Source: Asterias rubens
Taxonomy: Eukaryota
Direction of reading: 5' to 3'
Assembly: GCF_902459465.1 (NCBI RefSeq)
Contig: NC_047072.1
Coordinates: 8,060,001-8,124,000 of the forward strand
DNA: 64,000 nt
The notes below the pieces were generated by a model that worked only from the letters and a program-made list of their open reading frames with translations, ran no database searches and was not told the origin of the DNA. Shown in pieces: positions 27,255 to 50,900 of the stretch. The position numbers and the translations under genes are program-made. Position 1 is the first letter of the stretch; every line of letters begins with the position of its first letter.

Positions 27255-27420
27255 GGGCAATCTCGGTGGTCTAGTTGGTAAGACACTGCTCTAGAATTAC
27301 AAAGGTCGTGGGTTCATATCCCACCCGAGTATTACCGGCGGTATGCCTGTGATGTTTTTTCACAGAAATCTGGAAAGTACTTTTCACAGAAATGTGTACA
27401 GTCCTACACATATCGGTGTG
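27255..27420 (+). mobile_element. tRNA-derived SINE (family L)
   Basis: A-box tggtctagttgg and B-box-like ggttcatatccc. The body matches 2040-2135. Confidence 0.75.
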
Positions 27421-28733
27421 AGAGTAGAACCAAATATGTTATTTTGATGGTTATCATATATTGTGAATTTATCGACAATTCGCACACTTCGCTTGACTCT
27501 TCGCTTTAATGGATGGCACTGATCCGTGTCATTGAGTGAAAGTGCTTGGAAATCGCTTCAGAATTTTTGTCAAAATATGGAGACACTTTTTTCCTCGCAA
27601 GTTTTCTTCTTCCCCCCCACTCGAGTCAATGTATCGAGACGATGATACGCAATGTTGTTGTAGACAATTTGAATTGCAAAATGTCGCCCACATAATTTTG
27701 ATAACGGAGTGGTTTTTGTTTAGCCAGCGCTAAGATGACCCTAGCCTAACGCTGCTTGATCATAAAGAAAACCTGGTGCAGACGGTTGGTGAAGAGGTTA
27801 TGTGTTTAAAAGCTTTCTTCGTAATTGCTCTCTGAGCTACAAATCGGAGGGAACGAACTTGTGTAAAGGTTGGGGGCCTCTCCTGAGCATATTAGGAACA
27901 GTAATGGAGAAAAATCGTCGATAAACAATGAAACAGTATCTTCCCCGTATTGGGATACCACTGTATTTAAGGGCGGGAAAGACTTGTCCCCCCTACAAAA
28001 TGTTTCAAGTAAAAACCCTATTAAGACAGAAGGGAGGCATTTCCGGTAATAGCCATTTTTTTTCTCTCCCCCTACTGCAAAGCCGATGTTGCCTTAATCT
28101 AATAGAGACGCCGAGCGTTTGTTTTTGGCAAGCGGGGGCCTGTAACATTGCACCCCTCCGCACACAATTTATGCACTTAACTGCCGGTGTAAGGTTTAGA
28201 GGAAGTTCTTTAAACCGGTGGGCAGGAACATGCTCTAGAGAAATTGTGGGTCCGCGGAAAAAAAGGGGGAAAAAATATAAAAACATCGGAGGGAAGACGC
28301 AATCTGTATGATAGTTATTCCCTTTCCACCTCACGACTATCAGATGGCATTCTTTTGTCCGAATGTGACAGGAATGGAGCTCCATCGACCCCTGGATAGA
28401 AGAAAGTGGCAGTAATTTTCTGTCATACAACTGGAAAATTGCACACTTATGTGTAATATATCTTCCCGAACAGACCACTTTATGAAGATCGAAAGGGAGA
28501 GGTTTTTTCCCCTAAAATGCCCACTTTGGGTTGGAAAACGCTTTTCTCCTCATTTGTATCTCCCGTTTCATCGTTTAGGGAGTTGACTCTACCCTCCTTC
28601 CCTCCCTCACCACAAGAGGGTGTCGTGACATGTAGGGGGTTTGGGAATTGCAATCATCAAACAAAGTGTGAAGAAAGTCCAACTTCACTTGGGGTTGAAC
28701 AAAGGAAAATTAACTAGAGCAGGATTTGAATCA

Positions 28734-28966
28734 GTAGGATTTGAAACTTTGCATGGTGGAAATAAGATATAGAAGAGTTTGCGGTAACACCATGTAGTAA
28801 CAATCTCTAAATGAGTTGGGGTGGTTCTGAAAAGAATCGTTGGATTCTCCAGAAGACGATCAGAGCATACTGATCGAAACGTCGAGTTAATCCAACGGTT
28901 CTTTTCAGAACCACCCCAACTCATTTAGAGATTGTTATTACATGGTGTTACCGCAAACTCTTCTAT
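28734..28966 (+). mobile_element. Penelope-like (pLTR-type) foldback element, 233 bp
   Basis: Arms of about 80 bp form a near-perfect inverted repeat around a hammerhead motif. 13-bp TSD aggatttgaatca at 28721-28733 and 28967-28979. The fixed end is shared with 469 and 43474. Confidence 0.8.
28839..28896 (+). ncRNA. Type I hammerhead ribozyme motif (minimal PLE-type; U4>A substitution)
   Basis: ctc-CAGAAGA-c-GATCAG-agcata-CTGATC-GAAA-C-GTC-gag. Stem II is perfect, helix III is a palindromic ACGT, and stem I is ctc/gag plus gttggatt/aatccaac. The core has CAGAAGA instead of CUGANGA. Confidence 0.7.
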
Positions 28967-29209
28967 AGGATTTGAATCAACGACCTCTGGTCTAACGTGC
29001 CGGTGCTCTACCAACTGAGCTACATTTGTATCTATCCCTATGTTGGCAGTCTGCCTATTTTGTCGATATCTTTATGTCAGGTTGCTGGTCAGAAGCCATA
29101 GAAGTGAAGACTGCTGTGGATCACACCCAAGTTTGAAATAGTGATGCTTTCCAATACTGAATTAGTCAGCCGGGCCACTTGTTGTGAATATTTAGGGGTC
29201 CACATCCTG

Positions 29210-50639: not shown

Positions 50640-50900
50640 TATTATCCATAGCGTGTAACTTTATCTGTTTCTAATAATAAACCACAAGGGAAACTGACTG
50701 GGTACATTTTTAAATGATTTTGGATTGAACAAAGAAAAATTGACTAGAGCGGGATTTGAACCAACGACCTCTGGATTAACGTGCCGGCGCTCTACCAACT
50801 GAGCTATCTAGCCCTATGTTGGCGGTCTCCCAATTTTGTCAATATCCTTGTTCGGGGGTGCCTGTCAGAAGCCTTTAAACCCGGGTAACGATACAACCTG
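50640..50900 (-). mobile_element. tRNA-module repeat (SINE-like); tRNA-like part at 50742-50813
   Basis: Minus strand GGCTAGA-TA-GCTC-AGTTGGTA-GAGC...GGTTCAAATCCC..TCTAGTC. Acceptor and D stems pair, anticodon and T stems are broken. Homologous copies at 28690 and 56395. Confidence 0.8.

What the first reader, a model, noticed from the sequence alone, without database searches (positions are those of the whole stretch)
28734..28966. Foldback Penelope-like mini-element built around a hammerhead ribozyme
Seen: a 233-bp insert with a 13-bp TSD. Two ~80-bp inverted arms enclose ctc-CAGAAGA-c-GATCAG-agcata-CTGATC-GAAAC-GTC-gag, and the left arm carries the complete family end while the right arm is truncated. 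Established: Penelope-like retroelements carry minimal type I hammerheads with a palindromic, very short helix III in their pLTRs and often insert with an inverted partial pLTR. Inference: a non-autonomous, ORF-less ribozyme retroelement (retrozyme-like) family in this genome. Combining this copy with 43474 gives an intact consensus core CUGAAGA-C-stemII-GAAAC-GUC. This copy has U4>A and is probably inactive, and the extra C after A9 is a non-canonical feature needing a test. The class is known, but this family may be undescribed.
Basis: partly seen in the sequence, partly recalled or inferred. Interest (0 to 1): 0.8.

Follow-up and report, generated by a model that had tools for sequence, protein, structure and literature searches.

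The report
Truncated Penelope-like retroelement foldback insertion
This 233-base insert is an ordinary dead-on-arrival copy of the tail end of a Penelope-like jumping gene in a starfish-like genome. Its self-cutting RNA motif carries a family-wide core change, and it sits beside a copy of the signal that normally ends histone messages.

Summary
The 233-bp insert, its 13-bp target duplication and its 78-79-nt inverted arms are real. It is not a self-propagating mini-element. It is one dead-on-arrival insertion of an autonomous Penelope-like element (PLE); copies with RT plus GIY-YIG lie elsewhere in this, probably Asterias, genome. It consists of two head-to-head partial copies of the PLE 3' end, one with the 35-nt PLE "tail", joined at a 3-nt microhomology. 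Twenty other foldbacks have their own TSDs and different junctions, so they arose independently.

The loop is a genuine PLE minimal hammerhead: an extra base after A9, G10.1-C11.1 and an ACGU helix III, with 8 of 9 helix pairs covarying across six species. However, A at core position 4 is the family consensus (665 A, 22 U), not a private mutation. A sister family keeps CUGAAGA. RNA reads show no molecule ends at the cleavage site.

Each arm also carries a histone-mRNA-type stem-loop (Rfam 35.6 bits). It is conserved with compensatory changes in sea-urchin and starfish PLEs. In the sister family it is followed by a U7-complementary element like that of the host's histone genes. Other agents of this scan already noted this hammerhead/histone-loop pairing elsewhere in this genome. 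The class is known; the variant features appear undescribed.

The parts
28721..28733 (.). Left copy of the 13-bp target-site duplication AGGATTTGAATCA
   Evidence: the repeat finder D1, 100% identical to 28967-28979. The target is a tRNA-like sequence (Rfam tRNA 19.3 bits, E 0.18, minus strand 28965-29022; ARAGORN finds none).
28734..28768 (-). PLE 'tail': the 35-nt 3' extension present at only one end of the insertion. Read on the minus strand it ends ...CAAATCCTAC.
   Evidence: The same 35 nt (often plus TT) ends the tailed 5'-truncated copies L031, L032, L034, L035, L037, L040 and L041, and is absent from tail-less copies L033, L036 and L039. A 30-40-bp tail at one end is a defining PLE trait (PMC8557442; PMC11167929).
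28734..28846 (-). Inverted partial copy of the PLE 3' end (tail plus last 78 nt of the pLTR), 5'-truncated just upstream of the stem-loop
   Evidence: Matches the 3' ends of the longer copies at 97-98%. It differs from the right arm at two arm positions (97%).
28844..28846 (.). Junction microhomology ATT shared by the two partial copies
   Evidence: Read against the shared 3'-end sequence. The 21 foldbacks join at different points.
28844..28966 (+). Direct, tail-less partial copy of the PLE 3' end (123 nt: hammerhead, stem-loop, pLTR end ...CTCTTCTAT)
   Evidence: 100% identical over 123 nt to at least 11 other loci. Its 5' end lies at the family's step-like 5' boundary.
28847..28886 (+). PLE minimal type I hammerhead motif. 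Helix I is CTC/GAG (28847-49 / 28884-86). The core CAGAAGA is at 28850-56, with A at position 4 (28851). The unpaired C is at 28857. Helix II is 28858-63 / 28870-75 with loop 28864-69. GAAA is at 28876-79 and C-G-U-C17 at 28880-83. The expected cleavage site is 28883/28884.
   Evidence: Features match the published PLE min-HHR. Across six species 97.2% of cells pair and 8 of 9 pairs show compensatory change. Rfam hammerhead models hit neither this motif nor the canonical sister-family motifs.
28892..28938 (+). Histone-mRNA-type 3' stem-loop. The stem is GGTTCT/AGAACC (28897-902 / 28907-12), the loop TTTC (28903-06) and the flank ACCCC (28913-17). An HDE-like remnant AGAGAT lies at 28927-32.
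   Evidence: Rfam RF00032 scores 35.6 bits against a gathering score of 34, E 1.2e-6 in the 64-kb window. Alone it folds at z = -3.3. It is conserved with 3 of 6 pairs compensated across echinoderm PLEs.
28798..28843 (-). Mirror copy of the stem-loop in the inverted arm, with the second stem pair broken (G>A)
   Evidence: Rfam RF00032 scores 24.6 bits, E 9.3e-5.
28941..28947 (+). CATGGTG, the 5' half of the conserved terminal hairpin (its partner CACCATG lies in the tail). Both halves are present in the inverted copy (28752-58 and 28788-94).
   Evidence: CATGGTGT(T)ACCG.AAAC...CCACCATGCAAA..TTCAAA is conserved between the sea-urchin and starfish PLE 3' ends. Reverse transcription starts in a stem-loop at the tail in Anolis PAc (PMC11167929). 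Applying that role here is an inference.
28967..28979 (.). Right copy of the target-site duplication

Best explanation
Window 28734-28966 is a single, recent, non-functional insertion made by an autonomous Penelope-like element (PLE) of this genome.

Shown: the insert consists of two 5'-truncated copies of the PLE's 3' end in head-to-head orientation. The minus-strand copy (28734-28846) begins at the distal 3' end and so includes the 35-nt tail. The plus-strand copy (28844-28966) begins at the proximal end without the tail. They meet at a 3-nt microhomology and are flanked by a 13-bp staggered-cut duplication.

Inferred: the GIY-YIG endonuclease nicked both strands 13 bp apart. Each 3'-OH primed reverse transcription on PLE RNA, one from each of the two known start sites. 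Both cDNAs stopped early and were joined. This mechanism is taken from the Anolis PAc in vitro system.

The hammerhead in the loop and the histone-type stem-loop in each arm are simply parts of the PLE 3' untranslated region that were copied along.

In this family the hammerhead core carries a fixed U4>A change. The family has nonetheless made well over a thousand copies, many of them identical. This argues that canonical self-cleavage is not needed for its spread. That the A4 motif is inactive is itself an inference.
For: - A PLE ORF with RVT_1 (E 2.4e-10) and GIY-YIG (E 5.9e-5) ends in a 3' UTR that is 98-100% identical to the insert's loop and arm. Its closest named relative is an Asterias amurensis protein (95%), then Patiria, sea urchins and Anolis PLE-like proteins.
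- Copies are 5'-truncated at varied points and share one 3' end, with or without the tail.
- The 21 foldbacks have TSDs of different sequence and length and different central junctions.
- The tail is always on one side only.
- The literature describes exactly this: an inverted 5'-truncated copy, a 30-40-bp tail at one end, two RT start sites flanking the tail, and cleavage and extension of both strands (PMC8557442; PMC11167929).
- The right part is 100% identical over 123 nt to at least 11 loci and the TSD is perfect, so the insertion is young.
- A4 census: 665 A, 22 U, 8 C, 3 G.
- RNA reads show mostly passenger transcription (85-89% run on into unrelated flanks). No pile-up of molecule ends appears anywhere on the 3' end.
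Against: - No complete pLTR-ORF-pLTR copy of this family was found in the assembly. The longest copy, L044, lacks a 5' pLTR.
- Dual-strand priming is taken from an Anolis in vitro system and was not shown here.
- About two thirds of copies that hold the hammerhead core end within 9 nt upstream of it: exact counts fall 830, 576, 283, then only to 182 a further 18 nt on. RNA depth falls about tenfold at the same point.
- The activity of an A4 core was not measured.
Confidence: 0.85

Rival explanations
1. One reading: a non-autonomous, ORF-less, retrozyme-like ribozyme retroelement family that propagates as such, mobilised in trans by PLEs. In a softer form, the propagating unit is not the foldback but the ~123-160-nt 3' module (hammerhead + stem-loop + RT start region), made from its own short RNA.
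For: - At least 21 foldbacks are of similar size.
- There is a step-like 5' boundary just upstream of helix I in DNA counts and in RNA depth.
- In vertebrates, non-LTR retrozymes are reported to derive from PLE pLTRs (bioRxiv 10.64898/2026.07.22.740005).
Against: - The junctions of the foldbacks all differ, so the 233-bp form is not a replicating lineage.
- The similar sizes are partly a selection effect, because the search used this query.
- The unit is not tandem and its boundary is not at the hammerhead cleavage site, as a retrozyme monomer's would be.
- The core carries A4.
- RNA reads show no ends at GUC.
Confidence: 0.1
2. A TIR DNA transposon (MITE) with ~79-bp terminal inverted repeats.
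For: Long near-perfect inverted repeats and a flanking duplication.
Against: - TSD length and sequence vary between copies.
- One end has 35 extra nt.
- The arms are the 3' UTR of an RT-encoding element.
- Single-arm copies are far more common than foldbacks.
Confidence: 0.01
3. The insert has been co-opted as a hairpin-RNA / small-RNA locus: the 79-bp duplex is a Dicer substrate that silences the PLE family.
For: - The hairpin is very stable.
- Rfam long-hairpin miRNA models match weakly, at 67.6 and 48.4 bits, far below their cut-offs.
- Many RNA reads cross opposite-strand joints, so foldback copies are transcribed.
Against: No small-RNA data were examined. The Rfam hits reflect only hairpin shape. 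Nothing distinguishes this copy from other passenger-transcribed foldbacks.
Confidence: 0.04

Closest known systems
Canonical endonuclease-positive Penelope-like elements (Penelope/Poseidon type; e.g. Poseidon PAc of Anolis carolinensis, PMC11167929; structural review in PMC8557442)
   Same: - An RT plus C-terminal GIY-YIG ORF.
- Heavy 5' truncation and variable TSDs.
- An inverted 5'-truncated copy next to a direct one.
- A 30-40-nt tail at one end only.
- A hammerhead in the terminal repeat.
- A terminal hairpin at the RT start region.
   Different: The clade was not determined by a tree. No full pLTR-ORF-pLTR copy was recovered in this genome. The hammerhead lies ~250 nt after the stop codon, not at the ORF start as in PAc (L097). 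The terminal repeat also holds a histone-type stem-loop.
PLE minimal hammerhead ribozymes (Cervera and De la Pena 2014, PMC4209133)
   Same: Type I topology, a long helix II (6 bp), a short helix I, an unpaired nucleotide between A9 and G10.1, a G10.1-C11.1 pair, GAAA, and a palindromic A15.1-C15.2-G16.2-U16.1 with no loop 3, implying action as a dimer.
   Different: Core position 4 is A instead of the invariant U in the whole family. It is U in 7 of the 8 aligned PLE hammerheads.
Non-LTR retrozymes of animals (PMC7229834; bioRxiv 10.64898/2026.07.22.740005)
   Same: Short ORF-less sequences carrying type I hammerheads and related to PLE terminal repeats.
   Different: Retrozymes are tandem repeats whose monomers are bounded by cleavage sites and give circular RNAs. 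This insert is a single inverted pair bounded by TSDs, and its boundary is not at the cleavage site.
Replication-dependent histone mRNA 3' end signal (stem-loop + ACCA + purine-rich downstream element paired by U7 snRNA; Rfam RF00032)
   Same: - A 6-bp GGYYYU/ARRRCC stem, a UUUC loop, an A/C-rich 5' flank and an ACC(A/C)C 3' flank.
- In the sister PLE family the signal is followed, at the same spacing as in the host's H4/H3/H2A/H2B genes, by UUCAAAAGAG. This is complementary to 10 nt of the candidate U7 5' end.
   Different: It lies inside a retroelement's 3' UTR, 60-95 nt upstream of the element's 3' end, and not at a histone gene. In the window's family the downstream element is reduced to AGAGAU. 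No processed RNA ends were seen.
U7 snRNA repression of HERV1/LTR12 elements in human cells (PMC11417402)
   Same: A retroelement carrying sequence complementary to U7 snRNA.
   Different: By its abstract LTR12 bears U7-complementary motifs; a stem-loop is not mentioned. The effect there is host repression. I read only the listing and abstract.

Membership tests
Penelope-like element (PLE) insertion | Same-family copies encode RT plus GIY-YIG endonuclease | tested here: met
   L043:5741-7273 (510 aa) matches RVT_1 at 40.9 bits and GIY-YIG at 23.7 bits, both above their cut-offs. Its 3' UTR matches the insert at 98%. 1705 homologues were found, the nearest named one from Asterias amurensis at 95%.
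Penelope-like element (PLE) insertion | Target-primed insertion signature: variable-length TSDs and 5' truncation | tested here: met
   TSDs of different sequence and roughly 8-15 bp in 21 copies. Truncation points vary.
Penelope-like element (PLE) insertion | Inverted 5'-truncated copy adjacent to a direct copy, with a 30-40-nt tail at one end only | tested here: met
   The window copy, L035 and L040 and 21 foldbacks. Definition in PMC8557442.
Penelope-like element (PLE) insertion | Pseudo-LTRs flanking the ORF in full-length copies | tested here: inconclusive
   Not found for this family in this genome. It is present in the related S. purpuratus element L094, which has a hammerhead and stem-loop on both sides of the ORF.
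PLE minimal hammerhead ribozyme | Catalytic box CUGANGA | tested here: not met
   The motif reads CAGAAGA. A4 is in 665 of 698 otherwise exact copies.
PLE minimal hammerhead ribozyme | GAAA box, G10.1-C11.1, an unpaired base between 9 and 10.1, and palindromic 15.2-16.2 | tested here: met
   Read directly at 28857-28883. Criteria from PMC4209133.
PLE minimal hammerhead ribozyme | Helices I and II supported by covariation | tested here: met
   Across six species: 97.2% of cells paired, 8 of 9 pairs with changes on both sides, 0 of 500 shuffles reach the score, and slid controls pair at 28-36%. Within the genome: helix II is 97.7% paired with U-A against G-U between families.
PLE minimal hammerhead ribozyme | Self-cleavage after GUC | tested here: inconclusive
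   No accumulation of RNA ends at the site in four RNA-seq runs. Such reads were also not found for the active Anolis element, so this test has little power.
Non-LTR retrozyme | Tandem repeats with one hammerhead per monomer, and monomer boundaries at cleavage sites | tested here: not met
   There is a single hammerhead between inverted arms. Copy boundaries are TSDs. The 5' boundary step lies upstream of helix I, not at GUC.
Histone 3' UTR stem-loop (RF00032) | Score at or above Rfam's gathering threshold | tested here: met
   35.6 bits against 34 at 28892-28938. Other PLE copies score 35.4-38.9. Real histone genes and a dispersed ORF score 40-44.
Histone 3' UTR stem-loop (RF00032) | Downstream element complementary to U7 snRNA at the correct spacing | tested here: inconclusive
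   The window family has only AGAGAU (6 nt). The sister family has 10 nt and host H4 has 9 nt against the candidate U7. The U7 candidates score 28.6 and 27.1 bits, below the cut-off of 34.
Histone 3' UTR stem-loop (RF00032) | Lies at the 3' end of a replication-dependent histone gene and directs cleavage there | tested here: not met
   It lies in a retroelement UTR. No RNA ends were seen after the loop. The library type may exclude non-polyadenylated RNA.
TIR DNA transposon / MITE | Fixed-length TSD and symmetric termini | tested here: not met
   (variable TSDs). (35-nt extension on one side only).

The most novel reading that the evidence does not exclude
Echinoderm Penelope-like elements carry a working histone-mRNA end signal: an SLBP-binding stem-loop, with or without a U7-pairing downstream element. 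It sits between their hammerhead and their reverse-transcription start site. It has been kept for hundreds of millions of years through compensatory changes, and its downstream element tracks the host's own U7/histone type (CAAAAGAGA in Asterias; CAAGAAAGA in Lytechinus). The retroelement would thereby borrow the replication-dependent histone pathway for 3' end formation, stability or translation without poly(A), tying its expression to S phase. The window's family, with A4 in the hammerhead and a decayed downstream element but an intact compensated stem-loop, would show which of the three RNA signals is dispensable for spread.
Probability: 0.35. Interest if true: 0.75.

Novelty: new variant of a known kind. 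Interest (0 to 1): 0.5.

Why it matters
The insert itself is ordinary. It is a textbook example of how PLEs leave inverted, tailed stubs, and it should be annotated as such rather than as a new ribozyme element. Two family-level facts are worth keeping.

First, a PLE lineage whose hammerhead core is changed at an otherwise invariant position has made more than a thousand copies, many identical. Its sister lineage keeps the canonical core. This is a natural in vivo counterpart to the in vitro finding that hammerhead mutants do not impair PLE insertion (PMC11167929). It also fits the success of hammerhead-less Naiads (PMC8557442).

Second, a histone-type stem-loop is conserved with covariation in PLE 3' ends from sea urchins to starfish. 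In some families it is followed by a host-type U7-pairing element. I found no description of this in the searchable literature. If functional, it would be a new way for a retroelement to handle a non-polyadenylated RNA. It also creates thousands of decoy hits for histone stem-loop models in echinoderm genomes.

Tried and rejected
- **Rfam hammerhead models.** They gave no hit on the insert even at E<=10, none in the genome for RF00163, and none on canonical CUGAAGA sister copies. These models are blind to PLE min-HHRs, so the blank says nothing.
- **miRNA and snoRNA hits.** They are far below their cut-offs and reflect only the hairpin shape. Rejected.
- **Search for a full-length copy with a 5' pLTR.** A query from the ORF start region was swamped by an unrelated 167-bp repeat. 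A cleaner query found only L044 and one 77-79% relative.
- **Pfam on short broken ORF pieces of L032.** No hits.
- **Random sample of 40 copies to map 5' ends.** I replaced it with exact-pattern ladders.
- **A reference holding both families for read-laying (L082).** Both copies there were degenerate, so L032 was used.
- **Read laying.** It found no molecule ends at the hammerhead site or after the stem-loop. This is weak evidence, because most reads are passenger transcripts and the libraries may be poly(A)-selected.
- **Other hammerhead families of this genome (L083-L088).** No stem-loop follows them, so the pairing is specific to one PLE clade.
- **Literature.** No paper links the histone stem-loop with Penelope elements. 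There are no usable numbers for a U4A core and no hit for the sea-urchin CAAGAAAGA element. That element's identity as the sea-urchin histone spacer motif, and the severity of U4 mutations (Ruffner et al. 1990), rest on my own recall.
- **Target-site similarity.** The TSD shares 10 nt with the tail end. Other copies show no such similarity, so I treat it as a one-off.

Full report
**1. Observation**

A 13-nt direct repeat, AGGATTTGAATCA, lies at 28721-28733 and 28967-28979. Inverted arms at 28768-28846 and 28889-28967 are 79 nt long, 97% complementary and 42 nt apart. As RNA the 233 nt fold into one hairpin of -151.3 kcal/mol, against -51.5 for shuffles (z = -23.6). The loop is CTC-CAGAAGA-C-GATCAG-AGCATA-CTGATC-GAAAC-GTC-GAG (28847-28886). 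The left side has 35 extra nucleotides (28734-28768) that the right side lacks.

The insert sits in a tRNA-like sequence on the minus strand. Rfam tRNA scores 19.3 bits there (E 0.18), and ARAGORN calls no tRNA.

**2. What the family is**

Searching the window's own assembly (417.6 Mb, 150 contigs) with the insert gave 87 matches. They were of two kinds:
- 21 full-length foldbacks;
- many loci matching only positions 111-233 (loop plus right arm), 11 of them at 100% identity, usually followed by the reverse complement of the 35-nt extension.

Printing these loci showed copies that share one 3' end (...CAAATCCTAC, often plus TT) and are truncated at different points on the 5' side. Several share more than 100 nt of further upstream sequence, and L032 runs into coding sequence.

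Longer copies (L043, L044) carry ORFs of 510 and 524 aa. The 510-aa ORF matches RVT_1 (E 2.4e-10) and GIY-YIG (E 5.9e-5), both above Pfam's cut-offs. Its nearest named relative is an Asterias amurensis protein at 95% identity. Next come Patiria (57%), sea urchins and a crinoid (51-56%), and insect and Anolis proteins near 41%. The genome is therefore probably an Asterias starfish, and the element is a canonical endonuclease-positive PLE. Both points are inferences.

**3. Why the foldback is an insertion product, not a mini-element**

Each of the 21 foldbacks has its own target duplication, of different sequence and roughly 8-15 bp. That fits target-primed reverse transcription and excludes a TIR transposon.

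When aligned, their centres differ:
- in some the tailed arm stops before the stem-loop, as here;
- in others it runs through the whole hammerhead;
- in one the join is at the tip of helix II.

So they are independent events, not descendants of one foldback master. L035 and L040 are larger versions of the same thing.

In all of them the 35-nt extension is on one side only, and the other arm ends exactly at ...CTCTTCTAT. This is the published PLE signature:
- an inverted 5'-truncated copy beside a direct one, with a 30-40-bp tail at one end (PMC8557442);
- in vitro, the Anolis PLE protein cleaves and extends both strands and starts reverse transcription at two sites that flank the tail (PMC11167929).

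In the window copy the two partial copies overlap by ATT (28844-28846). The tail-less copy is 100% identical to the youngest family members and the TSD is perfect, so the insertion is recent.

**4. The hammerhead**

Cervera and De la Pena defined PLE minimal hammerheads by four traits: a long helix II, a short helix I, an unpaired base between A9 and G10.1, a conserved G10.1-C11.1, and palindromic 15.2-16.2 with little or no loop 3, implying dimeric action. The window motif has all of these.

Rfam's hammerhead models do not see it. They equally miss the canonical sister-family motifs, so that blank is uninformative.

Covariation is strong. I aligned PLE hammerheads from Asterias (two PLE families), S. 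purpuratus, Diadema, Patiria, Anneissia and Anolis, plus one unrelated Asterias hammerhead family (L083). In that alignment 97.2% of cells pair and 8 of 9 pairs have compensatory changes. No shuffle of 500 reaches the score, and slid controls pair at 28-36%.

The one deviation is position 4.
- CTGANGA...GAAACGTC occurs 1115 times in the genome (control 53). These are mostly a sister family with helix II GAGCAG/CTGTTC.
- CAGAAGA...GAAACGTC occurs 1229 times (control 18). Nearly all are this family.
- With the other 33 positions exact, position 4 is A in 665 copies, U in 22, C in 8 and G in 3.

The sister family shares the identical helix I flank. Older lineages, including the split copy at 43474, have U. 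So U is ancestral and A is fixed in this prolific lineage. From established hammerhead biochemistry (Ruffner et al. 1990, recalled, not re-read) a U4 change should cripple cleavage. That was not tested here.

**5. RNA evidence**

I laid four raw RNA-seq runs of a holder species on L032.
- Depth was about 1000-1700 per strand class over the last ~165 nt of the element.
- Depth dropped about tenfold just upstream of helix I, and was only 10-30 over the ORF.
- 85-89% of reads continued into unrelated sequence, and both orientations were equal. Most signal is therefore passenger transcription of truncated copies.
- Many reads crossed opposite-strand joints, so foldbacks are transcribed.
- No position showed an accumulation of molecule ends, neither at the hammerhead site nor after the stem-loop.

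This is weak negative evidence, given the library types and the background.

**6. A step-like 5' boundary (unexplained)**

Exact-pattern counts fall in steps:

| Pattern | Count |
|---|---|
| Stem-loop 28-mer | 1249 |
| Hammerhead core 28-mer | 830 |
| Core + 5 nt upstream | 576 (249 ATTCT, 327 TTTCT) |
| Core + 9 nt upstream | 283 |
| Core + 27 nt upstream | 182 |

About two thirds of core-bearing copies thus end within 9 nt upstream of the core, where the RNA depth also steps down. The window's tail-less arm ends there too.

Possible causes are a transcription start, a boundary related to the CCAG|C acceptor-like sequence, or an RT stop.

**7. The histone-type stem-loop**

At gathering threshold, Rfam's only non-tRNA hit in the window is Histone3 (RF00032) at 28892-28938, at 35.6 bits and E 1.2e-6. 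The mirror copy scores 24.6 bits.

The sister PLE family has the canonical loop GGCTCTTTTCAGAGCC-ACCAC followed by TCCTTCAAAAGAG, and scores up to 38.9 bits. The host's own H4, H3, H2A and H2B genes end with the same loop, ACCAC, a 5-6-nt spacer and CAAAAAAGAGA.

Two candidate U7 genes lie 6 kb apart (28.6 and 27.1 bits, below the cut-off). Both begin ...GGUUUUAUCUCUUUUGAA. The longest exact complement to this is 10 nt in the sister PLE, 9 nt in H4 and 6 nt (AGAGAU) in the window family.

The loop is not a local oddity. Related PLEs fetched from public assemblies carry it between the hammerhead and a conserved terminal CATGGTG...CACCATG region:
- S. purpuratus: AGTCCT-TTTC-AGGACT, in both pLTRs;
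- L. variegatus: the same loop, then ATTCT-CAAGAAAGA;
- Diadema: GGTCCT-TTTC-AGGACC (Rfam 29.1 bits);
- Patiria: AGTTCT-TCTC-AGAACT.

Copies from a crinoid, Anolis and a beetle lack it.

Across the eight aligned loops, 3 of 6 stem pairs show compensatory changes. The second, fifth and sixth pairs and most of the loop are invariant. As I recall, the second G-C pair, the top U-A pair and the loop uridines are the SLBP contacts. One caveat: the foreign loops were found with a pattern that required pairing, so their pairing percentage is partly built in. Their shared position, and the absence of any other hit in the scanned loci, are not built in.

CAAGAAAGA is, from my recollection of the classical sea-urchin work, the histone downstream element of sea urchins. 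If so, the PLE element tracks the host's type. Other hammerhead families in this genome lack the loop.

**8. Comparison with what is known, and novelty**

The insert is a member of a known class in a textbook arrangement. Two variant features stand out: the fixed A4 core in a very successful family, and the histone-type signal in the terminal repeat. The searchable literature holds no paper linking a histone stem-loop to Penelope elements. The nearest precedent is U7 pairing to human LTR12 (PMC11417402).

Two earlier notes of this scan on other pieces of this genome already reported the hammerhead/histone-loop pairing (s1-150093, s1-172673).

**9. Verdict**

- Observation: confirmed.
- Interpretation: partly supported. 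It is PLE-derived and carries a hammerhead homologue. It is not a self-propagating mini-element, and A4 is not a private mutation.
- The best-supported mechanism is a dual-primed, abortive PLE insertion.
- The function of the stem-loop remains an inference to be tested.

Noticed in passing
window 43474-44000 (minus strand): An older PLE 3' end of a U4 lineage. Its hammerhead reads CTGAAGAC-GATCAGAGC, then a ~345-bp insert with inverted ends (CAACCTCG.../...CGAGGTTG) and a 9-bp duplication GATCAGAGC, then resumes ...ATACTAATCGAAATGTTGAG.
   Followed up: partly
window 43300-43470: Tandem ~40-bp repeats (AAAATAGTACAAAATGTTTTGT-type units) directly abut the tail end of the 43474 copy.
   Followed up: no
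window 28721-28748: The target duplication AGGATTTGAATCA shares its first 10 nt with the element's own tail end (AGGATTTGAA, 28736-28745; one search gives 85% over 13 nt). Other copies show no such similarity. It could be chance, microhomology-aided priming, or endonuclease preference for tail-like sequence (mentions tail-dependent EN recognition in Drosophila).
   Followed up: partly
window 27260-27331 (+) and 50741-50813 (-): Two tRNA-model hits (37.1 and 46 bits). The 50741 one resembles the tRNA-like sequence into which the PLE inserted at 28965-29022, suggesting a tRNA-derived repeat family.
   Followed up: no
L089:411-2270 (G000 C4:10740264-10742123) and at least 6 identical dispersed copies (L074-L078, L080): An intronless 619-aa ORF with no Pfam match. 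It ends ...HDRLIHKFKKL and is followed by a perfect histone stem-loop and CAAAAAAGAGA (44.2 bits). Identical copies sit on at least 7 contigs. It may be another mobile or multi-copy gene using a histone-type 3' end.
   Followed up: partly
L069 and L070 (G000 C17:9503699-9503755 and 9509743-9509797, minus strand): Two candidate U7 snRNA genes 6 kb apart. They have identical 5' regions and compensatory differences in the 3' hairpin. Both score below Rfam's cut-off (28.6 and 27.1 against 34 bits).
   Followed up: partly
genome-wide; equivalent to window 28841-28849: A step-like 5' boundary of the PLE family just upstream of hammerhead helix I. Exact counts run 830, 576, 283 and then 182, and RNA depth drops tenfold at the same place. 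The family also splits into ATTCTC (249) and TTTCTC (327) subfamilies there.
   Followed up: partly
L003:1261-1505 (G000 C20, just upstream of a foldback): Three tandem ~80-bp repeats of the tail plus the first part of the arm (query 1-87 at 1261-1346, 1341-1425 and 1421-1505).
   Followed up: no
L072 minus strand, about 1012-1130 (G000 C14 histone cluster): A degenerate copy of this PLE family (core CAGAAGATGATCGG..., stem-loop followed by a C-run) sits inside the histone gene cluster, between H4 and H3 3' ends.
   Followed up: no
L044:4480-4650 (G000 C4): An abundant ~167-bp repeat, often in tandem at ~260-bp spacing and 94-98% identical at dozens of loci, lies just upstream of the longest PLE copy.
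   Followed up: no
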